DNA of 63,327 nt, filler included, from Bigelowiella natans CCMP2755 (taxonomy: Eukaryota; Protista; Cercozoa): assembly GCA_000320545.1 (NCBI GenBank). It is 5 parts of 5 records of this genome, joined end to end, with 100 filler letters (N's around TTAATTAATTAA, not from the genome) between each part and the next. Parts side by side here need not be neighbours in the genome. Positions count along the whole stretch, not along the records: positions 1 to 25,762 come from ADNK01002878.1; 4 more parts are not named here. One strand, 5' to 3'. Shown here one piece after another: positions 966 to 12,870 of the stretch (the stretch's first letter is position 1; each line of letters opens with the position of its first letter). The notes beneath the pieces are model-generated. The model did no database searches. It had not been told where the DNA came from and saw only the letters and a program-made list of their open reading frames with translations. The translations under genes and the position numbers were made by a program.

Positions 966-2578
966 TGAGCGTATCGTTGTGTCTTTGCATACGTGCGTGC
1001 GTGTATCTTCGCGTCTGTGTATTCACTGCAGCGTATATGCTCTCTCAAACGGGTACAGAACTATCGAATTTTGTCCTTCTCGTCTTACTGCTTGTTGTTC
1101 TTTGTGTGTTAGTACATGTTCTACCCTCACGGCCCCGACTCCGAGAGGGTCGCCAAGCGCCCCCCCCTCGGCCTGTTCCACAACGGGAAAACGCCAGTCG
1201 GCCACTGGGATGCTGTGTGTCTTTCGGAGGTATTATTATTGAGGCCATATATTGTTTCCAGTACACAATGGCGTGAATAGTAACGCAGGCACACTATTGC
1301 GTAGTAGTGAGAAGCATTGGAAGCGCTTCGGGCTATTGATGGATGTCGTAGTGTAGTTTATAGTTCTTTGAATTTCACTTTCTCTTTTTGTATATATGTG
1401 TGTGTATGTGTGTGCTGCCCTTTGTGAATGTGTGTATGCTATTGCGTTTGCTTTGTATGTCTGTCTGTCTCTGGGCATCCGTACTGCCCCTAACCGAACC
1501 GAAGCGACTGTGATGAAGCTGTCTCTTGAAGGAGGAATCATCCTTGAAACTCTTAGGGATCTCTCGGCTACCGATATTAAAATGGGCGGGTTCTGAGACG
1601 ACTGGGTGTGCACTTAGTGGTCAAATCCATGCGCAATTAAGCTGCAGTACAGACAAACACGTAACAAACACATTAGGTGCTGGTTTAGTCGTGCGTTCTT
1701 ATATGCTCAAATAAAGCTAGAATATGCGCGTTGCCCTTCGAAGATCCTTCTATCTGTTAGAAGTTAGGTCATAAATAGATGAGAGGTACAGTAAACGTGT
1801 TGTAGTCTAGCGTGGGCGCACTGTATATCTTGTGATTCGATGCGTAGAATGCAAGCTTGTATCGCATCGCGCTCGGTATATGCAATATACAAGAAGGTGG
1901 TCGTAGTCCCGCTGCTGAGCGTATTATTATCAATGTAGCCATCATGATCATGATATTTCTTGATGTTTTGTGCAGCACAAAGCGGGTGTGCGGATAATGT
2001 TGTTCGAGTATGCAAGTACATTTGTAAACTTGAAATTACACCGCACTAGCGCACGCTGCAACTAAGTGCACGACCGTTCGCCGAGCAGCCTGAATTGCAA
2101 CAGATGACAAAGAGCAGTTTATATTGTGCCGCGCATGCTGGCATGCGCATGCCACATAATGCTTTCAATCACATGAATGACAAAATTCCAACACAGCTAG
2201 ACAGGCGGCATCAAAGAAAAGAAGCTCAGTCTTTGAGTAGCTTTTGTAGGATTTCAACTGAGGATGTTTAATAGTTGCAGACTTTCAAACCTTCTCACGA
2301 CGCTGCCATATTAGATTTTGGTATCTTAATAACGCCCAAACAGCACCTTAGCCGCCCCTGACACTTCCAGAGCTGCAAGATCGGCAAACACGTATATTTT
2401 GTTTTATTTCGAATCTACTAGTGGTACAATGTAGGCTATGATTCGATACTAAAACAGTACAATTGATACTAGTATAGTTGATATCACTATACGCGTGATA
2501 TCAACAAGTGCGTGCTTTTCGTCGCATGAAAACAGAACCTGATCTGTATGGTTAAATTAAGCACATGTTCTTGTTATG

Positions 2579-4993
2579 TCACCGAGTGCACAAAAATTGT
2601 TGACTTTTGATATCATCTAAGTAAGCAATGCCTGCAACGATGACCATCATCATTGCACTGACTGCTGCCATAAATGCTGCTGCAAAATAAATCATCGAGA
2701 GCCTATGAAATTCATTTATTTTCGGAGTAATAAGTCTCCGCGAACACATTGTGGCCAAACATCCCACGCCTATGAGTACACCGCCGTAGTCGAATTGAAG
2801 GGATCCTACAAGACTATTTGTCAGTTTTTGTTTATGTACATTATGTGTTTCGGACTCAAGTCAACTTTTACCAACTGATGCGTAGCTTAGAAGTACAACG
2901 CCAGTTGTGAAGAAAACCATCGTGTTGGACGTTGCCAAAGCAACTTCTGAAATTTGCCGATTAAGATTGCTCAGCGGCGATTGTGTCATATTGAGTAGTA
3001 ACTCGACAATGTCAATTACCAGGCAGGGCTCTCATTTCCATCATCAAGGGGTACGTAACTACCGCTCCTCCAATACCAAAAAGTCCTTAAATGTTACAAT
3101 CACATGCAACTTCTACAAATCAGGATATTCATCATCTATAAACTGCCAGTCACGGTATGCAAAACCTGAAAAGAAGCCTGCGAAACCATTCAGAATCGTA
3201 TTGAAGAGCGTCGAACGGCCCGTCCATCTTATGTCCCCGATTGCGAAGGTGTACCTGCGCATGAGACTTCTGTTTGAATATGATCCAATCCAGTCATAAA
3301 TTTCATTTTTTGGTAGAGTACCTGGCTTTTTTTTTCCTCTGATGCTGTAGAAGGAGAGTAGCTCGATTGTAAATACTAGAGAATACCTTGTAAATGTTAC
3401 GGTCTTTACAATGTAGATCGAACTTAGCGATATTTGGCTTACACACCAATATGAGAGCATTGACTATTATGAGTAGCCAAAATCCAGAAGTGCCGCATCT
3501 TGTGGCAAAGGACAGTGCAAGGAATGCTGAATATATATGTGTGGTATTAGATATTTTTCATGTTTCAGCTTCATCTCGCACCTAATACAGTTAAGAAGAC
3601 TGCAAAAAGTCCACGGACCTAATTTGAGTTTGGAATTAAAATTGCAGTGATGATTTGTGAAATTCGTTGGAGGTTGTAGTTGTTAATCCTGATAACCTTG
3701 CTCCAAGGAGGCAGCTGCATCTCCTCTCTCAGTATCTTCTCAAGTTCATCGCTATGGGTCTCCATTACTTCATTGTGGATCACTTTATTAGTAATTTGGA
3801 ACTTAGGTTCTCCAATGGGAGGTGGTTTGGGTAGAGAGACACTAGTGGTTGGTGGCATATTGACAAGGCTTGGTTGTTCCTTCTTCCCTTCAATGTTTGA
3901 AAAGCTCATCTGTGCCGAACTTTCTATATTTGGAGACCGAGATCCATTCACGCTGCGTTTGTCATCAACAGGGCTTACTATTCCCACGTCCACGTCACCT
4001 CTACTACTTTGCTCAATGTATACTGAATTCACTCTGCTTCGATGTACTACTCCAGATTCCGCGTCTTCCCCCATGAATAGACCCACCTTGGCTGAGTTTA
4101 CACTATTGATAGAAACAGCTGAAGGGCGACGGGTGAGACTCTGTCATTGTACACATGTAGCAGATTCAGGTCGTATCATGTGTGAACGTGTGGACGAAAA
4201 TTTGAGCCTACTTCGTATTCTCTTCTATGCAACGCTAGGGCCTTTCTGGTGAGATTGAGAACCAAGATACAAAGAACAAAACCAAGAAGTAGAGAGACAA
4301 CCCAACCTAAAAGAGAAGCTGCTTAAAGAGTGCCTGTGCTCAAATGCTCAGGATGCATCAAATAACCTGGGAGTAGTTGAGTTACTAAACTTCCAAAAAC
4401 AGCCATCAGAATTGCCATTGGCTTTGCATAAAGTTCATCCCAAATCATATTGTATATCAATTGAATTTAGAATAACTTGCATCATAGTCTTCGATAGAAT
4501 AAAACTACCTCCATCATTCGAATTACGTCCCAATTTACTAGAGGACGGTTAGACTTTGTGTAGAGAGCATATTTGGATACAATTAAGGTCAGTGGCTAAA
4601 ACATGTTTTTGTCTCAACAATGATGACGTACCGATGGACGCCTCTGTGCATGTTTGAAATTAAATTTACTATTGAACTTCCGAATATTGTTGCAACAGAG
4701 AGCGGAAGAATTTCCTAAGGAAAGAAAAGTCATGATTCTCTCTTATCTAAAACGTGAAGTAACTTACCTGTATCGGAGACCTAGTCAGCACAAGCGAATA
4801 CAACGGAACTAGGAATTCTCCGCCATTGATGCCAAACCCAGAGGCAATGAAAACTTAGTCACGAATCACACAGTAAAACACTCAGTATAGTACGAAAACA
4901 TTCAACGGTCCGCGCGACGATGCACGCACCAGTAAGGAAAGCCGAGCACACCACCCCGCCGTTGGCGGCAGTGAAAGGGGTCAGGCTGGCCAT
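2579..4993 (-). CDS. Sulfite exporter TauE/SafE (TSUP) family membrane protein, multi-exon
   Basis: Spliced by eye with GT-AG introns: MASLTPFTAANGGVVCSAFLT|VFIASGFGINGGEFLVPLYSLVL, ILPLSVATIFGSSI, RPLVNWDVIRMME|PMAILMAVFGSLVTQLLP|GWVVSLLLG, long loop, DIRWTG..AGFFSGF..GIGGAVVTYPLMMEM..VALATSNTMVFFT..LQFDYG..SMIYF. The two G-rich TSUP repeats are typical of the family. Confidence 0.8.
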
Positions 4994-5337
4994 CCAGGCG
5001 TCCCTCTAACGAGCTGACGAGTAGAAAACTGGCAGAGCGCAACAAATTGCGAAACAGCAAATCAGAGCTTGTCGCAGCTTGAAATCCTCAGTCGTTTCCG
5101 TAGTTTCTCACTGATTTTGCAAATGTCGTGCAGTTCCTGGCAAGGTCGGTCAAGCGCCGAAAGCAGGGAAACGCGCGAAATTGCACTTGAAGTTGTGCTG
5201 CTGCTTTGATGGAGGCTTCAGGTTGTGTGCAAGAAGAAAGCCGCACAGGGCTTTTGGGCACCAACTGAACATGCACCTCGCACCGTGACCCATCTGACAT
5301 CTAGCCATGATCCCATGATCCTTTCAACCGCTTCCGT

Positions 5338-5663
5338 TGTTGCGCGTAAGGTGTTCACAGGCCGAGGCGCTACGTGCACAAGTAGGCAGGGGGGGGGAAA
5401 GGCACGTTTGCTTCCTTTTGAAGAGTTGTGTTTATTTTTATTAAAGATTATATTTTTATTAAATCGTGCACTGCGTAATCATTCGCGAAGCTTTCGCGAA
5501 TGCCGCCGCACGTGGGGCAGCACACTTCCGGTGTGCTGCCATGAGTCCCGCCGGAACCCACGTGCCTATGCTGTATTAATATCTACGTTATCTATATTCT
5601 ATATCCGCGACAACCCCTTTGTTGTCGCACGTGACTTGTGCCCGCGTAGTGGTACGCGCTACA
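5338..5663 (-). repeat. 3' LTR (326 bp)
   Basis: Appears identical by eye to 10999-11324. Termini TGTTGCGCG...CGCGCTACA form an imperfect terminal inverted repeat. Confidence 0.97.
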
Positions 5664-5671
5664 CCTCCCCC
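5664..5671 (-). other. Polypurine tract
   Basis: Minus strand GGGGGAGG directly abuts the 3' LTR. Confidence 0.8.
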
Positions 5672-5714
5672 AAGTCACGTTGCTCCTTCCTTCCTTCCTT
5701 ATTCCCTTAGACCT

Positions 5715-6310
5715 TCATCGCTTTCGGAACTTCACCAACCACCAGGTAATAGATTCCTCTCTAACCTTATCTCCTTTGTCGCTTACCCAGAACTCACCTT
5801 CGTCCTTAGGTTCGTGTCCATACCAGCCCTCTGCATCAAGGTCCCCCAGGACCTTATACCAGTGCTCAAAGGGTAAGTCGGGAACAGCTAGGTAGAGTAG
5901 CTGATATTTTCCGTCCTTTATTTTCATAGCTACCCTCTCCATATTTCGTAATCCAGGGTAGCCTAGATAGACAATCTTCATGCGCCAATCGTCGTTCACC
6001 CTGACCTTATTGTTTCCATATTCCACATCGAACTTAGGTCGGGGTCCTAAACAAGGCATTGCTCGCTCCCACACAGTAGGGTTTACTTTAACATCCTCTA
6101 GGAGCTTCTCACCGATATCATAATTCTTTAGGTGACTGATGTGGCGCAAGGTGACCCTGTTCCCATCATAGATGTAGTACTGCTTCCTCCCCTTCCTCTC
6201 GGTAACCTTTGCAACGCCACCCCAGAAGGGGTCTTGTTTATTTCTCGATCTCAGATTTACCTTGGCCCTAACATACTGTCCTTCCTTTAGAACTCGGCCA
6301 TCGTACGGGA
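5715..6310 (-). CDS. Orphaned C-terminal end of pol: duplicated integrase C-terminal segment plus degenerate N6-adenine MTase-like domain
   Basis: Open frame reading ...RHISHLKNYDIGEKLLEDVKVNPTVWERAMPCLGPRPKF (identical to the pol end) and continuing DVEYGNN..DDWRMKIVYLGYPGLRNMERVAMKIK..LLYLAVPDLPFEHWYKVLGDL..WWLVKFRKR*. It ends about 45 nt before the PPT. Confidence 0.8.
6030..6310. repeat. Inverted repeat arm A (281 bp)
   Basis: Reverse complement of 9243-9523; no mismatch seen on inspection. Confidence 0.95.
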
Positions 6311-6358
6311 GTATGCAACATTAATGACGAAGACGCTAACAGGACTATCAAAGTTGCT

Positions 6359-9300
6359 ATGACCAAGGTTAAAGTTAAAGACAGCTACGGAGACTACAAG
6401 AAACTACCTGCCCTTTGGGATAGTGGCAGCATGCCGAAGTCCTTCATAAGCCTAAGCACAGTAAGAAGGTTAGGACTATTGGATCAAGTGACTAAGAAAG
6501 AACGTAAATATGCTCAAGCAGACGGAAGCTCTTCCATGAAGACCGTCGGTGAGCTAATGCTAAAGCTACAGATACCTGGCAGCGACGCGGAGACCCAAAT
6601 CAAGACCCGAGTAGCCATGACTTTATCCATGGAACTACTCCTCGGACAGGATGCCCTAGAAAAATTAGGGGGGATCATATCATTCTACAATCACAAGATA
6701 TACTTTGCTAAGTTGCCAAAGAAGTCAGGCAGGACCATCAGCCAGAACATGATACGGCTTGACGAGTGGACCTCTGAGTCAAGCGTTAATGCGTTAGAGT
6801 TTATGGACCTAGCGGACAACAAGCTACCTACACCTACCGAGCTACGGAAGAAGAACCCCGGCAAGACCATCCGACAGATAACGGAGCTACTGGACAAGAC
6901 CCCCCCAGCTGATGATTGGGATATCGACAAAGGCAAAAAGTACATTAATAAAATATTAAACGAGAAGTACTCTGACATCACCAAGCCGACGACGAAGCCC
7001 TCCAGCAAGCTTACCCCAGTAAAGATCGAGCTAAAGAAGGGATACGAAGAGTGCATCATCAATGACCCAGAACATAGGCGACCGGAAGCGGACTGGGAAA
7101 AGATAGAGTGGCAGATCAATGAATGGGCAAAGGAAGGGAAGATAGAGCCAAGCAACTCACCATGGAACGTGAGACATGTGCTAGCTAAGAAACCTACTTA
7201 CCCTTTCTTCCGCCTGGCGCACAACTTCATCCGCCACAACCGAGTAATAAAGAGGATCCAGACACCTACACCAAGGATAGATGACGTTATTGAACACGTC
7301 ATAGGATACAAATACTACTCTTCCCTAGATAAAAATGAATCATACATGCAGACACCCATCCACAAAACCTCCCGCCCCATTACCGCGTTCTCCAGCAGGC
7401 ACAGGAAGTGGCACTTCGTCGTATTCCCTTACGGCCTAAGCATATCAGGGGATGCGTTCAGTAGTCAGAACTACAGGGCATACACACATGATGGGATGGC
7501 GTCTGTGTTGTGGGTGTTTGTGTTTGTGTATGTGGATGATGACATAATATGTACCAACACAGTCGTCGCTCAGATCTTCCTCCTGGAAAATATATTTATT
7601 AGGTTTGCACACTTCGGTTTTACTATTAGACTGCAGAAGTGTACATTCCTAGCTACAAGAATCAAGTGGTGTGGATATTACCTGGAGCAAGGCCGCATCA
7701 CCCCAAACCCCGAGAAAGTAGCAGCACTACAGCAAGCCCCTAAACCTAAGAATGCAAAGGAGTTAAAGTCATTCTTGCAGACTGCAGCTTGGATACTACG
7801 TAGGTTCTCCCCTACCTACGCTAGGACTGCAGCTGCTTTTACTACTGCTTACCGGAAGGAGAACTCTGTAGGCCTCAGCTTCGCTAAGGTGTGGGCCAAG
7901 GCTGGCCTTGATGCCCACTTCGATAACCTAATAAAGTTATGCAGCAACACCCTATTGAATGCTAAGCTAGACACTACTAGACCAGCTACCCTATGGACAG
8001 ACTGGTCTAAGCTAGGTATGGCTGCTGTACTTACCCAAGACCAGCAGATCATACGGGTGTGGGGCAGGGCCTGCACAGCAGCTGAGGCCAAGTACAGCCC
8101 TACAAAAGGAGAGTATAAAGCCATGACTGAGGCGCAGAGGAAACTAAGATACTACCTGCTGTCGGTGCCCAGCTTCACCTTAATGACTGACCACAAGCCC
8201 CTCCTAGGCATCGACCGCAAGCTCGAAGCGCCTAACGATGAGTATGCAGCTATGAGGGCGGACACGGAAGAGTTTAGGGACAAGAGGACAGTGGTCTACG
8301 CACCAGGAGACAAGCAGCTTGCTGACTATTTCAGCAGGCTGTTCGAAAAGAAAGTCCCTACCCAGGTCACCCCTATGGTTAACGCGATTACCTTCGAGGA
8401 CGGCGACTTCCTGCCTGAGCCAGAGGAGCTCCAGCACCTTCAAGAACACCTGGATAAATACAAACACAAGCATGAGGTACTTAGTGATAGGATATATGTA
8501 TACACTAATAATGTTAGGCGTACCTACGTGCCACGGCGGACCAGGGGAGCCCTTCTCTTTACCGCCCATGGACCTGCACACGTAGGAGAAAACCATATCA
8601 CTGCTCTACTCTACCATTACTACTGGCCCTACAAGCTAAAAGAGATAAGGACATACCTGCGTGGCTGCAGGTGCTCCAGCTTGAAGGCGGCAGGCGTCGC
8701 CACCAAGGAGTCCAGCAAGAGCCGTGCATCTAAGAAAATCAAAGCAAGGAACTTCTTAGATATCGTGCAAATTGATGTTTATAAGTACGATGGCTATCAC
8801 TACCTTACCTTCGTTGATGTGGCCACTGGAAAGTGCTGGGTTAAAAAGATTATCAAGGTCAACGTTGCTAAGAAGAACAAAGGCTTATATAAGCAGAGGC
8901 TTACTAACTGCTACCGTACCTGGGAGTCTGAGCTCCAGGCTATCCCTGATGAAGTTAGCATAAACAAGATACCAAAGAAGTTACATGTGGATAATGAGAC
9001 CTCTCTTCTACAGCTACCACACCCTAATATTGATGCCTCACCTGTATACTATGCCCAGTCCAACTCCAAGGTAGAGCGACTCCACCGCACCTTGGCCAAC
9101 CTAAGCAGGATAAATAGCACCACACCAGACAAGATACAAGGGTTAGTAAACGACACCTTCACGTCTGGGGGAGGTATCAAGGATAAGGAGAGGGAAGAAG
9201 GCGACGACAACGACGACGATACCGAGAGCGAAGACGAGAAGGTCCCGTACGATGGCCGAGTTCTAAAGGAAGGACAGTATGTTAGGGCCAAGGTAAATCT

Positions 9301-9604
9301 GAGATCGAGAAATAAACAAGACCCCTTCTGGGGTGGCGTTGCAAAGGTTACCGAGAGGAAGGGGAGGAAGCAGTACTACATCTATGATGGGAACAGGGTC
9401 ACCTTGCGCCACATCAGTCACCTAAAGAATTATGATATCGGTGAGAAGCTCCTAGAGGATGTTAAAGTAAACCCTACTGTGTGGGAGCGAGCAATGCCTT
9501 GTTTAGGACCCCGACCTAAGTTCTTTATGTCGTCTAGGGTCATGGGCTTGTCTTGGTCCTGCGTTGCTGGTACTGCTGTCTTCGTCGGCGCCTGCTTAAG
9601 GTGA
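6359..9604 (+). CDS. pol: Pol polyprotein (aspartic protease, reverse transcriptase, RNase H, integrase), inverted relative to the element
   Basis: Motifs ALWDSGS (PR), PYGL and YVDD (RT), LWTDWS..YSPTKGE..TDHKPL (RH), H-x3-H..CRC, IVQID, LHVDNE, KVERL (IN). The last 26 aa are read from antisense gag. Confidence 0.95.
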   Translation: MTKVKVKDSYGDYKKLPALWDSGSMPKSFISLSTVRRLGLLDQVTKKERKYAQADGSSSMKTVGELMLKLQIPGSDAETQIKTRVAMTLSMELLLGQDALEKLGGIISFYNHKIYFAKLPKKSGRTISQNMIRLDEWTSESSVNALEFMDLADNKLPTPTELRKKNPGKTIRQITELLDKTPPADDWDIDKGKKYINKILNEKYSDITKPTTKPSSKLTPVKIELKKGYEECIINDPEHRRPEADWEKIEWQINEWAKEGKIEPSNSPWNVRHVLAKKPTYPFFRLAHNFIRHNRVIKRIQTPTPRIDDVIEHVIGYKYYSSLDKNESYMQTPIHKTSRPITAFSSRHRKWHFVVFPYGLSISGDAFSSQNYRAYTHDGMASVLWVFVFVYVDDDIICTNTVVAQIFLLENIFIRFAHFGFTIRLQKCTFLATRIKWCGYYLEQGRITPNPEKVAALQQAPKPKNAKELKSFLQTAAWILRRFSPTYARTAAAFTTAYRKENSVGLSFAKVWAKAGLDAHFDNLIKLCSNTLLNAKLDTTRPATLWTDWSKLGMAAVLTQDQQIIRVWGRACTAAEAKYSPTKGEYKAMTEAQRKLRYYLLSVPSFTLMTDHKPLLGIDRKLEAPNDEYAAMRADTEEFRDKRTVVYAPGDKQLADYFSRLFEKKVPTQVTPMVNAITFEDGDFLPEPEELQHLQEHLDKYKHKHEVLSDRIYVYTNNVRRTYVPRRTRGALLFTAHGPAHVGENHITALLYHYYWPYKLKEIRTYLRGCRCSSLKAAGVATKESSKSRASKKIKARNFLDIVQIDVYKYDGYHYLTFVDVATGKCWVKKIIKVNVAKKNKGLYKQRLTNCYRTWESELQAIPDEVSINKIPKKLHVDNETSLLQLPHPNIDASPVYYAQSNSKVERLHRTLANLSRINSTTPDKIQGLVNDTFTSGGGIKDKEREEGDDNDDDTESEDEKVPYDGRVLKEGQYVRAKVNLRSRNKQDPFWGGVAKVTERKGRKQYYIYDGNRVTLRHISHLKNYDIGEKLLEDVKVNPTVWERAMPCLGPRPKFFMSSRVMGLSWSCVAGTAVFVGACLR
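9243..9523. repeat. Inverted repeat arm B (281 bp)
   Basis: Reverse complement of 6030-6310. Confidence 0.95.
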
Positions 9605-10959
9605 TCTAATATTCCGTTTATCTGCTGCTGTATAGCATTGATACTGTTCTGCTTTTTGTTCTTATATTTATTGTTCTTCCCGTTGTTGCTGCCTTGCCAT
9701 TTGCTGTTGTTATATCCTTGTCCTCTGCCTTTCTTTCTCTTTAACTTCTCGTAGTGTTCGTTGAGCTGCCTGATCGTCATCCTGGGTCGTCCTTCTTTCC
9801 TGTCTCTGCAGTCTTTAGCGGTGTGTTTCCCTTTACGTGAGCAGTATCCGCAACGTCGGTTACCTTCCCTGTCCTTGTACCAGTCTCGCTGCGGCTTAAT
9901 AGCGTTAATGTTTCCTATGCCAGGTACCTTAGGGCTGGTAAACTTGCGGTCCTGCTCCTGCTCGCGTAGGGATATAGCCTGCACTGCTGCCTCCATCGTG
10001 GTGTAGCCTTTCTCCGTAACGTAAGTGGATTCCTTTATCTTTAACTTGAACTCTTCAAACCTTGCCTGATCATCACCTGTGTTGTAATTAAAATCATGTA
10101 GTTCGTCGATCATATCCTGGAAGCGCGTGGCAAAGTCTCTAACAGGTTCTCTCTCATGCTGCATCATTGCTCTGTATTTTCTAATAGCCTGGGGTAGGGA
10201 GTTAGCATCCTGTTCATTTACAAAAGCCTTCATTATCGCCTCAACGTCTCGTAGCCCACTAACTGTAGTGTGTATTTTCTCTAGCTGCCTGATCCGGGTC
10301 CTGCCTGTCTCGTAAAGGTCCATGGCTTGCTTTATTATAGCTAGCCATTTGAGCTTGTCGTTTTCGGTGGGGTTAGGGGTAAAGTCGCAGAGTATACTCC
10401 TAGCGTTCTTCCACCACCTCCTTGCCTCACCTCTTTTCCCGTTGTATTTCGTTATCATAACCGGTGCTGTTTTAACAGACATGAACTGGGTGTTCCGCTG
10501 TACCGGCTGCTGCTGCTTGACGGTGCTCTGGGTCGTCCCCCGCGAGGCGCCCAGACCCCCGTCGTTCCTAAACAAAGCTGCCCACTCTGGAGGTAAGTCT
10601 GCTTCGTAATCCATGATGTCCTGCATGATAGCTGCCCAAACATCATGTGTCTGATACTTGTATTCTATCGATACTTTCAGTTTGGCGTAGTTGCTCGCCC
10701 TGGGTCGCAAGGCTCGTAATGCCATTACGACCTTCTTGCTTTCGGCGGCCACGTCCTCGTCGTCCGCCTCGTAGAAGTTCTCCAGTGCCTCTGCTGCTGC
10801 ATCTGCTTTCTTAATCCCGGGTGCTGGTCCCGGCGGTGCCTGTGGAGGTGTTCCTCCTCCTTCCTTAGCGTCCGTATCGCCCTTCCTTTCCTGTTTCTGC
10901 TCGTGCCCTTGCACGGCCTGCGAGCCAAAGTCCTGCTGTTCTTCTAGCTGCTGTGACAT
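9430..10959 (-). CDS. gag: Gag (capsid-like region plus Zn knuckle)
   Basis: 509-aa ORF starting just after the PBS. Retrotrans_gag-like segment MMQHEREPVRDFATRFQDM and knuckle CGYCSRKGKHTAKDC. The last 30 aa are read from antisense pol. Confidence 0.92.
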   Translation of the reverse strand: MSQQLEEQQDFGSQAVQGHEQKQERKGDTDAKEGGGTPPQAPPGPAPGIKKADAAAEALENFYEADDEDVAAESKKVVMALRALRPRASNYAKLKVSIEYKYQTHDVWAAIMQDIMDYEADLPPEWAALFRNDGGLGASRGTTQSTVKQQQPVQRNTQFMSVKTAPVMITKYNGKRGEARRWWKNARSILCDFTPNPTENDKLKWLAIIKQAMDLYETGRTRIRQLEKIHTTVSGLRDVEAIMKAFVNEQDANSLPQAIRKYRAMMQHEREPVRDFATRFQDMIDELHDFNYNTGDDQARFEEFKLKIKESTYVTEKGYTTMEAAVQAISLREQEQDRKFTSPKVPGIGNINAIKPQRDWYKDREGNRRCGYCSRKGKHTAKDCRDRKEGRPRMTIRQLNEHYEKLKRKKGRGQGYNNSKWQGSNNGKNNKYKNKKQNSINAIQQQINGILDHLKQAPTKTAVPATQDQDKPMTLDDIKNLGRGPKQGIARSHTVGFTLTSSRSFSPIS

Positions 10960-10970
10960 TGTTAGTCAAA

Positions 10971-10993
10971 TCGTTTCCCGTGTGTGGAAGCCA
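10971..10993 (-). other. Primer binding site (tRNA 3'-end complement, Glu/Asp-like)
   Basis: Minus strand TGGCTTCCACACACGGGAAACGA begins 5 nt inside the 5' LTR. The plus strand reads like a tRNA T-arm/acceptor end TCGTTTCCCGTGTGTGGAAG-CCA. The isoacceptor identity is inferred. Confidence 0.8.
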
Positions 10994-10998
10994 AAGGT

Positions 10999-11324
10999 TG
11001 TTGCGCGTAAGGTGTTCACAGGCCGAGGCGCTACGTGCACAAGTAGGCAGGGGGGGGGAAAGGCACGTTTGCTTCCTTTTGAAGAGTTGTGTTTATTTTT
11101 ATTAAAGATTATATTTTTATTAAATCGTGCACTGCGTAATCATTCGCGAAGCTTTCGCGAATGCCGCCGCACGTGGGGCAGCACACTTCCGGTGTGCTGC
11201 CATGAGTCCCGCCGGAACCCACGTGCCTATGCTGTATTAATATCTACGTTATCTATATTCTATATCCGCGACAACCCCTTTGTTGTCGCACGTGACTTGT
11301 GCCCGCGTAGTGGTACGCGCTACA
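10999..11324 (-). repeat. 5' LTR (326 bp)
   Basis: Direct repeat of 5338-5663, followed by TSD CCGT. Confidence 0.97.
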
Positions 11325-12870
11325 CCGTTGAACTGCTTCAATCGTGCACTCATTCGTTCACTTGACACCGGAATTGCAACGGAGCGTGAAGAGCGGAGAC
11401 AGCAATGATGCGCAGACACCTTCCACATGCACACAATGACTGCACAAAACGTGCAAGCGTCACGTTGCTGTCGAGCAAGTTGGATGCGTCTCAATGTCGT
11501 CGTTGTCAATGATCGATGTGATCCTTCGTGTCGTGGCGTCGTGGCGATGACCAAGCGCGGCCATTCATCAAGTGCAAAGCTCGATCACTGAGCAATGCAA
11601 TTGAGCAAGTTCGACGCACAGATCAGGTCGTTCGTTTGGCCTTGCTAGCTTGGCTAGTTGGCGTGCATGCATGATTCTGGAATCCCAGAACAATTGTGCG
11701 TTGCACGACCACATTTTGGCATTGGGCGACCCTTCTAGCTAGCCAATGTGGTCCAGCATTGATCAAATTCAAGCATGTTCATGACATCCGTCTCACGCTT
11801 GCTGATCGCGTGCTAGCGTGGGATCGCCGGGATGCGACATGACGTCATCATGGGCACGGTTCATGCTGTGCACATTGACACACATGCTGGCATGCCAGCT
11901 GCAGCCGCCAGCATGCTAGCATGGCACATGGATTTTGTCACTTTTATCACTTCATTGCATCCGTTTTGCATTGCCAGATTGGCGCAAATGCGCACCACCG
12001 TACATAGCGTGTGCTTGCATGCATGCATGCCAGCTAGCGTGCCAGGCGGACACAACTCCGAAAAACCTGCAACGAGTGGCATGACCTCTCAATTGAGAGC
12101 ATTTATTTTGCGTTTTTGTGCTGAAATTTTGCAAGCATGCAAAGCCAGTGTGTGTGTGCACGCCCTCATGAGCTTGCAAAACTTGTGGCACAGCAAGTCA
12201 CAGTGCAACTGCGCTAGCTATTTCAGAAGTGGCAAGCATTTTCCGCTGGCAGGCGTTGAAAAATGAGGTTCTGAAGCTGGCATTCGAAAAAAAATCAAAA
12301 TTGAACTTCAAACAGGCTCCAGTGTGGAGTGTGCTTCCAATGTCCAATTGCAACGATTGAGCGTGCCAGGCTGTGCGCGCAAAGCATGGTTTGTGCAAAA
12401 CCCAGTCGTCACAGGGGTTGATGGAGTTGTGGAACATCGGAAAGACAAAAGACACAGCGCTTTGGCTGCGAGCCGTCTGCGTGCATTCCACAGTCGCAAC
12501 TGCGTGGGCTGGCATCCTTCGATTCTGTGTTGCGCAGGAACCATTCTAGCATTGTCGGTGAGCTACAACATCACAAGGGGTAGAGACACGCACGTACTAT
12601 GTAGTGCAATGAATTAGCATGCTTTGTCTTTAGTTAGACACGTATGTACTTTGGTCGTCATATCTGTGCTTTGTCTCAAAGCGCGTGGAGCGCATGGGCA
12701 CTTGCTGCAGCATGCACACAGCAATATTTTTGTGACGCCCAGCCAGCTCTTGTGAGCACATGCAAGCACAGCAGCTTAGCGCTACGATTAGATAGTCGAC
12801 ATCAATGTTACGACTATATTTGAAACATTAAATATAATAATCATTAATTTGGCTTGGAAGTAACCTAGAA

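What the first reader, a model, noticed from the sequence alone, without database searches (positions are those of the whole stretch)
5338..11324. Ambisense LTR retrotransposon: intact pol inverted against gag and bracketed by a 281-bp inverted duplication
Seen: on the element (minus) strand the order is 5'LTR-PBS-gag-X'-(PR-RT-RH-IN)'-X-tail-PPT-3'LTR, where X is 281 bp (6030-6310 and 9243-9523). The gag and pol ORFs converge and overlap at 9430-9604. Both are uninterrupted, the LTRs look identical and the TSD is intact. Rejoining the gag breakpoint (..GAC ATA AA, 9524) to GGGA GTA TGC (6307) restores one frame, DDIK-G-VCNINDEDANRTIKVAMTK.., and continuing through X into the tail gives a single 1655-aa Gag-Pol. 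This indicates an essentially lossless inversion with G/GGGA microhomology, with one breakpoint at the Gag/protease boundary. Inference: it is either a one-off staggered-break or template-switch inversion in a very young copy, or a replicating architecture with Gag and Pol on opposite strands, which is not the norm for Metaviridae.
Basis: partly seen in the sequence, partly recalled or inferred. Interest (0 to 1): 0.88.

Follow-up and report, generated by a model that had tools for sequence, protein, structure and literature searches.

The report
One rearranged copy of a retrotransposon
This is one scrambled copy, with its enzyme genes flipped, of a jumping gene that has about 260 normally arranged copies in the genome of the marine alga Bigelowiella natans; it is an accident of copying, not a new two-stranded way of organising such an element.

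Summary
Two 326-bp LTRs are identical, the 4-bp target duplication is CCGT, and a 281-nt perfect inverted repeat (6030-6310 / 9243-9523) brackets an inverted PR-RT-RH-IN segment. The gag and pol ORFs converge.

The genome is Bigelowiella natans, a haploid genome assembled from Sanger and 454 reads. Normal copies run LTR-gag-pol-LTR on one strand, are 5,717 bp long and carry one 1,657-aa ORF. The normal gag/pol junction occurs 260 times. The pol-side junction of this copy occurs once. The gag-side junction occurs twice, and the second case is the error-rich last 240 bases of contig C1451.

Against the normal copy, this one has lost no base and gained one inverted copy of a 281-bp stretch. The junctions overlap by 9 bp (GAACTTAGG) and 3 bp (GGA), and both meet the same point of the normal element. 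This points to a single event of two microhomology-guided template switches, either during reverse transcription or during host replication or repair.

The copy can encode only a truncated Gag. Its pol lies antisense with no promoter of its own. An ambisense replicating design is not supported. Interest is low.

Side observations: the family is in a very recent burst, and its antisense strand gives multiply spliced RNA.

The parts
5334..5337 (.). Target-site duplication CCGT, left copy.
   Evidence: Other copies have their own 4-bp duplications.
5338..5663 (-). 3' LTR of the element (the element's sense strand is the window's minus strand). It is 326 bp, TG...CA.
   Evidence: It is identical to 10999-11324. 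A 30-mer from it occurs 664 times in the genome.
5664..5673 (-). Polypurine tract (TTGGGGGAGG on the sense strand) abutting the 3' LTR.
   Evidence: Read directly. The same flank is present in normal copies.
5718..6029 (-). Tail of the polyprotein (aa 1554-1657 of the normal ORF), in its normal orientation.
   Evidence: (L001 4945-5922 equals window 6310->5334).
6030..6310 (-). X, the sense copy: 281 bp encoding aa 1460-1553 (integrase C-terminal region).
6308..6310 (.). Junction 2, with microhomology GGA shared by the start of pol and the end of the X arm.
   Evidence: A 30-mer across the junction is unique in the genome.
6311..9242 (+). Inverted segment holding PR-RT-RNase H-integrase, 100% identical to normal copies but on the opposite strand to gag.
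   Evidence: (L001 2010-5225 equals window 6308-9523, 100%), and Pfam.
9243..9523 (+). X', the inverted duplicate of X. It is contiguous with the inverted pol, as in the normal pol-X order.
9515..9523 (.). Junction 1, with 9-bp microhomology GAACTTAGG shared by the end of gag and the end of X'.
   Evidence: A 36-mer across it occurs only here and at the end of C1451.
9524..10959 (-). gag, in normal orientation, with a CCHC knuckle at aa 370. Together with the 9-bp junction it supplies the native residues up to ...DDIKNLG. The ORF then runs 27 foreign codons into X' and stops at 9430.
10960..10998 (-). Leader and primer-binding region between the 5' LTR and the gag ATG.
   Evidence: It is identical in normal copies. 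No tRNA match was tested.
10999..11324 (-). 5' LTR, 326 bp.
11325..11328 (.). Target-site duplication CCGT, right copy.

Best explanation
The window holds one rearranged, non-autonomous copy of a very young, high-copy Ty3/gypsy-type LTR retrotransposon of Bigelowiella natans.

The normal element reads A (gag) - B (PR-RT-RH-IN) - X (281 bp of the integrase C-terminal region) - C (tail) on one strand, as a single 1,657-aa ORF. This copy reads A - X' - B' - X - C. The block B+X was copied in reverse and X was then copied again in the forward direction. No base was lost.

Mechanism (inferred). A growing DNA strand whose 3' end stood at the gag/pol boundary (...GAACTTAGG) annealed to the complementary 9-mer at the far end of X on a strand of the same polarity. 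It then returned by a 3-nt match (GGA/TCC) to the proper template at the start of X and finished X-C-LTR.

This could have happened during plus-strand synthesis by reverse transcriptase before integration. It could equally have happened during host replication or repair after integration (a FoSTeS/MMBIR-type event, or a staggered break with microhomology-mediated joining). The sequence cannot tell these apart.

Consequences (inferred). The LTR-driven transcript encodes only Gag with a 27-aa foreign tail. Pol is antisense in that transcript and has no promoter of its own on the other strand. The copy therefore cannot replicate by itself. It keeps both LTRs, the primer-binding region and the PPT, so it could at most be mobilised by the proteins of normal copies.
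For: - Anatomy.
- Normal copies L001-L004 are collinear, with LTR starts 5,390-5,391 bp apart against 5,661 bp here. L001 carries one 1,657-aa ORF.
- Three BLAST blocks map the window onto L001 with breakpoints at L001 2010/2011, 4945 and 5225, at 99.9-100% identity.
- Census by exact pattern: normal junction 260, junction 2 once, junction 1 twice.
- Microhomology of 9 bp and 3 bp, and both junctions meeting at one point of the normal element.
- Independent read sets show the normal joint: a contig in X13 joins 6310 to 9515 on opposite strands, and a loose end in X2 at 6308 reads ATAAAGAACTTA.
- A contig in X1 bridges the left flank into the LTR, so an insertion at this site is seen in a run of the same or a very closely related organism (run names are coded; X1 may be the assembly's own source, so not necessarily independent).
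- The genome is haploid, so there is no allelic contig to confuse matters.
Against: - No raw read was seen to span either junction. The only read tool returned Logan contigs and listed few pieces.
- The assembly is from Sanger and 454 reads. The interior of a 5.7-kb, 260-copy repeat is placed by mate pairs rather than by spanning reads.
- Junction 1 also stands at the end of C1451, next to a different and unique flank. A strict one-off explains this only by a misplaced read.
- Neither junction was found in metagenome contigs or in protein records.
Confidence: 0.8

Rival explanations
1. The inverted form exists at more than one locus. Either it was packaged and reverse-transcribed in trans by proteins of normal copies, or the 9-bp inverted match is a recurrent template-switch hot spot. 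A hot spot would produce the same junction 1 repeatedly, with a different second junction each time.
For: - Junction 1 is present, base-perfect, in C1451 next to a flank that is unique in the genome and differs from the window's flank.
- A variant lineage does spread in this family. The same 264-bp in-frame gag deletion sits at two loci with their own target duplications, AAGA and TGAA.
- X1 holds another strand-switch joint inside X (6164 to 9284) at about single-copy depth.
Against: - Junction 2 occurs only once in the genome.
- C1451 ends 222 bases past the junction, and its last 130 bases carry 6 mismatches. That looks like the tail of a single read. Many contigs of this Sanger/454 assembly end inside this repeat, so a read from the one inverted copy could have been recruited there.
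- The X1 joint is absent from this assembly.
Confidence: 0.1
2. The rearrangement is not in the alga's genome. It arose in a cloned insert in E. coli or through chimeric reads, and the assembler built it into C859.
For: - The assembly is from Sanger and 454 reads, with hundreds of identical copies.
- No independent read set was shown to carry either junction.
- The two junctions lie 3.2 kb apart, about the span of one small-insert clone.
Against: - The two junctions form one coherent, lossless event with microhomology at both, and both meet the same nucleotide of the normal element. Random chimeras would not do this.
- Junction 1 appears in two contigs with different neighbouring sequence quality, so at least two reads probably carry it.
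- The flanks of C859 carry a matching target duplication.
Confidence: 0.08
3. A true ambisense retroelement design: Gag is expressed from the LTR transcript and Pol from an opposite-strand transcript, and the arrangement is propagated as such.
For: - Both ORFs are open.
- Antisense transcription of the family exists in nature. In this copy such a transcript would carry pol in sense.
Against: - There are 260 collinear copies against one complete inverted copy.
- The inverted copy is base-for-base a rearranged normal copy.
- The pol ORF has no LTR or other evident promoter. It starts at an internal Met, 17 codons inside the normal protease region.
- Gag-Pol fusion, which normally delivers Pol into particles, is lost.
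Confidence: 0.02

Closest known systems
Ty3/gypsy-type LTR retrotransposons (Metaviridae) with a single gag-pol ORF
   Same: - LTRs are TG...CA.
- The target duplication is 4 bp.
- A PPT abuts the 3' LTR.
- Gag carries a CCHC knuckle.
- The domain order is PR-RT(YVDD)-RNase H-integrase.
   Different: - It is a divergent lineage. The nearest proteins outside Bigelowiella are only 38-42% identical.
- Pfam does not detect the integrase core, and the match to PFV integrase is weak (E 0.012).
- The window copy has its pol block inverted.
Microhomology-mediated template-switch rearrangements (FoSTeS/MMBIR; inversions flanked by inverted duplications; staggered-break inversions). Named from general knowledge; a multi-step template-switch case is PMC7507428, seen only as a search hit (title and start of abstract), not read.
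   Same: - An inversion with an inverted duplication at one breakpoint.
- Microhomology at both junctions.
- No loss of sequence.
   Different: The event is confined to the inside of a 5.7-kb retroelement. Reverse transcriptase, which is itself prone to template switching, is an equally good candidate for the polymerase.
5'-inverted LINE-1 insertions made by twin priming. Named from general knowledge; L1 5'-inverted copies are named as a structural class in the abstract of PMC2912911 (search hit; the paper was not read).
   Same: A retroelement copy in which one block is inverted relative to the rest. Junctions show microhomology and small duplications or deletions. The event happens during reverse transcription.
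   Different: L1 uses target-primed reverse transcription at the chromosomal nick, and the inverted block is the 5' end. Here the element has LTRs and both of its ends are intact and normal.
Mu killer of maize, a rearranged transposon copy with an inverted duplication that gives a hairpin RNA (PMC3440606, abstract as listed; the paper was not read)
   Same: A rearranged copy of an active transposon that holds part of the element in inverted orientation. In principle it is a source of double-stranded RNA against the family.
   Different: No small-RNA or silencing data exist here. No Piwi-domain gene was found in this genome by a six-frame search. The family looks active rather than silenced.

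Membership tests
Ty3/gypsy-type LTR retrotransposon (Metaviridae) | Two direct long terminal repeats ending TG...CA | tested here: met
   The LTRs are 326 bp, identical, and TG...CA.
Ty3/gypsy-type LTR retrotransposon (Metaviridae) | Short target-site duplication that differs between copies | tested here: met
   CCGT here; CACG, TGGG, GGTG, AGTG, AAGA and TGAA in six other copies.
Ty3/gypsy-type LTR retrotransposon (Metaviridae) | pol order protease - reverse transcriptase - RNase H - integrase | tested here: met
   Pfam on the normal ORF gives PR at 513-599 (weak), RVT_1 at 798-939, RNase H at 1018-1118 and integrase H2C2 at 1222-1269 (weak). YVDD is at aa 889.
Ty3/gypsy-type LTR retrotransposon (Metaviridae) | Integrase catalytic core (DDE, Pfam rve) | tested here: inconclusive
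   PF00665 was not reported at E <= 0.1. There is only a weak match to the PFV integrase N-terminal region and start of the core, E 0.012.
Ty3/gypsy-type LTR retrotransposon (Metaviridae) | Primer-binding site complementary to a host tRNA, and a polypurine tract | tested here: inconclusive
   A PPT (TTGGGGGAGG) abuts the 3' LTR. A TGG-containing leader follows the 5' LTR, but no tRNA was matched.
   Junction 2 occurs once, junction 1 twice (the second at a dangling contig end), and the collinear junction 260 times.
   Only Logan contigs of a metatranscriptome were available. Splice orientation shows antisense RNA of the family, but nothing specific to this copy.
Microhomology-mediated template-switch inversion with duplication | Microhomology at both junctions, no loss of sequence, and an inverted duplication at one breakpoint | tested here: met
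   The overlaps are 9 bp and 3 bp. All bases of the normal copy are present. The 281-bp inverted duplicate is present.

The most novel reading that the evidence does not exclude
The inverted derivative is not inert. One possibility is that the 9-bp inverted match is a recurrent switch point, or that the derivative has been mobilised in trans, which would explain junction 1 at a second locus (C1451). A second possibility concerns its LTR-driven transcript. That transcript carries 3.2 kb of antisense pol, a 281-bp perfect hairpin, and eight introns that are spliced in antisense RNA of the family. It could act as a natural antisense or hairpin source against a family in full burst, as Mu killer does in maize. 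It could also serve as a natural intron-marked reporter of retrotransposition.
Probability: 0.07. Interest if true: 0.55.

Novelty: new member of a known kind. Interest (0 to 1): 0.2.

Why it matters
As it stands, little. Rearranged dead copies are a normal by-product of an active retrotransposon family, and this one does not change what is known about how retroelements are organised.

It is a clean, lossless example of a two-step microhomology-guided template switch, with both switches anchored at one nucleotide position. That makes it a useful textbook-style case.

It also draws attention to a very recent burst in Bigelowiella natans: about 260 internal junctions and 664 LTRs, near-identical in this repeat-prone Sanger/454 assembly. 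I found no paper in the held library that mentions this element family. The two papers most likely to cover it, Curtis et al. 2012 and Blanc et al. 2015, are not held and could not be read.

Tried and rejected
- **Read-level check.** Only Logan contigs were served. The output lists the normal joint in X13 and X2 but no piece across either inverted junction. Presence or absence of the junctions in independent reads is therefore undecided.
- **Exact-product look-ups** of the two junction-dependent ORFs found nothing on record.
- **Exact junction patterns in metagenome contigs** found nothing.
- **The X1 strand-switch joint (6164 to 9284)** is absent from this assembly.
- **Search for a sister contig of the C1451 flank** found only C1451 itself, so the second locus cannot be resolved.
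- **Piwi (PF02171) six-frame search of the genome** gave no hit. This is weak negative evidence, because exons are short. Papers gave no statement on RNAi in this alga.
- **Coding potential of the antisense RNA.** Removing the 12 introns gives no ORF longer than 189 codons, so there is no sign of an antisense gene.
- **Papers.** Curtis et al. 2012 and Blanc et al. 2015 are not held.
- **No mended or consensus sequence was built.**
Full report
**1. The observation**

The region is as described.
- The repeat finder gives one direct repeat (5336-5635 / 10997-11296, 100%) and one inverted repeat (6030-6310 / 9243-9523, 281 nt, 100% complementary).
- Read directly, each LTR is 326 bp, TG...CA, at 5338-5663 and 10999-11324. 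The two are identical, and CCGT flanks the element on both sides.
- ORF 6359..9604 (+, 1081 aa) holds protease, reverse transcriptase, RNase H and the integrase zinc domain.
- ORF 9430..10959 (-, 509 aa) is gag. It has no Pfam hit, but it carries a CCHC knuckle at aa 370.
- The two ORFs converge and overlap at 9430-9604.

**2. The genome**

Relatives of the polyprotein carry JGI 'Bigna1' names at 93-100% identity. The genome statistics, 91.4 Mb in 3,736 contigs, match the published Bigelowiella natans assembly exactly. That assembly is from Sanger and 454 reads, and the genome is haploid (PMC12730881, Table 1 and text). This matters in two ways. There are no allelic contigs. And the interior of a long identical repeat was placed by mate pairs, not by spanning reads.

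**3. The normal element**
- The LTR has at least 40 perfect matches, and a 30-mer from it occurs 664 times.
- In four copies (L001-L004) the LTR starts are 5,390-5,391 bp apart, against 5,661 bp here.
- L001 carries a single 1,657-aa ORF with domain order PR-RT-RH-IN.
- BLAST of L001 on the window gives three blocks:
  - L001 201-2011 equals window 11325->9515 (5' LTR and gag).
  - L001 2010-5225 equals window 6308->9523 (pol and X, 100%).
  - L001 4945-5922 equals window 6310->5334 (X, tail and 3' LTR).
- The normal order is therefore A-B-X-C on one strand, and the window copy is A-X'-B'-X-C. No base is lost and the copy is 270 bp longer.
- The natural frame at the gag/pol boundary reads ...DDIKNLGVCNINDED....
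- The window's gag reads ...DDIKNLG followed by 27 foreign residues and a stop.
- The window's pol frame opens only 13 codons upstream of VCNIN, and its first ATG lies 17 codons inside.

**4. The junctions**
- On the gag side, normal copies match the window down to 9515, while the inverted arm runs up to 9523. The overlap is 9 bp, GAACTTAGG.
- On the pol side, normal copies match from 6308, while the arm runs to 6310. The overlap is 3 bp, GGA.
- In coordinates of the normal element, junction 1 joins 2011 to 5225 and junction 2 joins 2010 to 4945.
- Both junctions therefore share one breakpoint, at the gag/pol boundary. The other breakpoint is staggered by 281 bp. Two independent events would not coincide to the nucleotide, so this is one event.

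**5. Census**

| Feature, by exact pattern | Places in the genome |
|---|---|
| Collinear gag/pol junction | 260 |
| Junction 2 | 1 (this window only) |
| Junction 1 | 2 (this window and C1451:157023-157058) |

- C1451 has a different flank that is unique in the genome.
- That contig ends 222 bases beyond the junction, and its last 130 bases carry 6 mismatches. This looks like the low-quality tail of a single read.
- Many contigs end inside this repeat. A read from the one inverted copy recruited to the wrong contig end is therefore the simplest account.
- A second copy, or a recurrent switch at the same 9-mer, is not excluded.

**6. Independent data**

Twenty public runs hold the stretch or a part of it (14 hold half its words or more). 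All were served as Logan contigs.
- X13 shows the normal joint (6310 to 9515, opposite strands), and a loose end in X2 reads the normal gag end.
- An X1 contig bridges the left flank into the LTR.
- No listed piece crosses either inverted junction, but only a few of several thousand pieces are listed. This says nothing either way.
- Look-ups of the junction-dependent ORF products, and of the junction patterns in metagenome contigs, were blank.

**7. Mechanism (inferred)**

The pattern has four features: an inverted block, an inverted duplication at one end only, microhomology at both joints, and both joints anchored at one position. It fits a strand-switch model.
- A 3' end standing at the gag/pol boundary annealed through its last 9 nt to the complementary 9-mer at the distal end of X, on a strand of the same polarity.
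- It copied that strand backwards until the template ended at the same boundary.
- It then jumped back by 3 nt to the correct template at the start of X.
- The polymerase may have been the element's reverse transcriptase during discontinuous plus-strand synthesis. In that case the copy integrated already rearranged.
- It may equally have been a host polymerase after integration (FoSTeS/MMBIR-like), or the event may have been a staggered break joined through microhomology.
- I see no way to separate these from sequence. A 9-bp inverted match is not special in itself. By my own arithmetic, roughly 60 such pairs are expected by chance in 5.7 kb. What is informative is its use at the joint.

**8. 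Function (inferred)**

The copy keeps both LTRs, the leader and the PPT. It could therefore be transcribed and, in principle, packaged by proteins from normal copies. It cannot make Gag-Pol. Nothing found here supports expression of pol from the plus strand.

**9. Comparison and verdict**

The family passes the tests for a Ty3/gypsy-type element, except that the integrase core is not detected by Pfam. The rearrangement belongs with microhomology-mediated template-switch inversions. It resembles 5'-inverted L1 copies only in outcome. The ambisense reading fails its defining test, which is shared junctions at several sites. The finding is real but ordinary, and interest is low.

**10. Seen in passing**
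- The family is in a very recent burst.
- A 264-bp in-frame gag deletion is shared by two insertions with their own target duplications, so variant lineages do spread.
- In a marine metatranscriptome (X15), contigs at 99% identity or more lack 12 short segments (56-165 nt). All have GT-AG ends (one has GC-AG), and all lie on the antisense strand of the normal element. Removing them gives no long ORF. The family thus gives a multiply spliced antisense RNA.
- Eight of these introns lie in the inverted block. In this copy they would be in the right orientation to be spliced from the LTR-driven transcript. This is an inference and was not tested.

Noticed in passing
Whole genome G000; examples L001-L004 (C516, C394, C356, C265): The family is in a very recent burst. 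There are 664 LTR 30-mer matches and 260 collinear gag/pol junctions, and the copies are 99.9-100% identical over 5.7 kb. That is roughly 1.5 Mb of a 91-Mb haploid genome. Identity may be inflated, because reads from all copies may be mixed in a Sanger/454 assembly.
   Followed up: partly
Window 5746-5809, 5873-6037, 9821-9923 and 10021-10101 (+ strand); 6452-6575, 6656-6716, 7093-7201, 7266-7383, 7928-8034, 8574-8656, 9263-9351 and 9422-9477 (- strand): Contigs of a marine metatranscriptome (X15) skip 12 short segments of 56-165 nt. Eleven have GT...AG ends and one has GC...AG. All lie on the antisense strand of the normal element. Several have strong GTAAGT or GTATGT donor sites. After splicing there is no ORF above 189 codons. 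The family therefore gives a multiply spliced, apparently non-coding antisense RNA.
   Followed up: partly
L005 (C581:8268-13183) and L006 (C509:52407-58058); missing part = window 10116-10379: The same 264-bp in-frame deletion in gag is present in two insertions with different target duplications (AAGA and TGAA). A deleted variant lineage has therefore transposed. The C581 copy carries a further large deletion that is unique to it.
   Followed up: yes
L008 = C1451:155236-157260: A second contig carries the 5' LTR, gag and junction 1, then ends 222 bases into the inverted arm with 6 mismatches in its last 130 bases. Its flank is unique in the genome. It is either a misplaced read or a second rearranged copy.
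   Followed up: partly
Window 6164 joined to 9284 (run X1 only): One contig of run X1, at about single-copy depth (132, against 123 for a unique flank contig), joins the antisense and sense strands of X at another point. It is not present in this assembly. It could be another strand-switch rearrangement in a different culture or strain, or an artefact.
   Followed up: partly
L001:4164-5537 (aa 1200-1657 of the normal polyprotein): Pfam rve does not recognise the integrase core. The only matches are the H2C2 zinc domain (weak) and PFV integrase (E 0.012). The closest relatives (38-42% identity) also lack a recorded rve domain. This looks like a divergent integrase lineage.
   Followed up: no
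Whole genome G000: A six-frame search for the Piwi domain (PF02171) found nothing. Short exons may hide it, so this is not evidence that Argonaute is absent.
   Followed up: no
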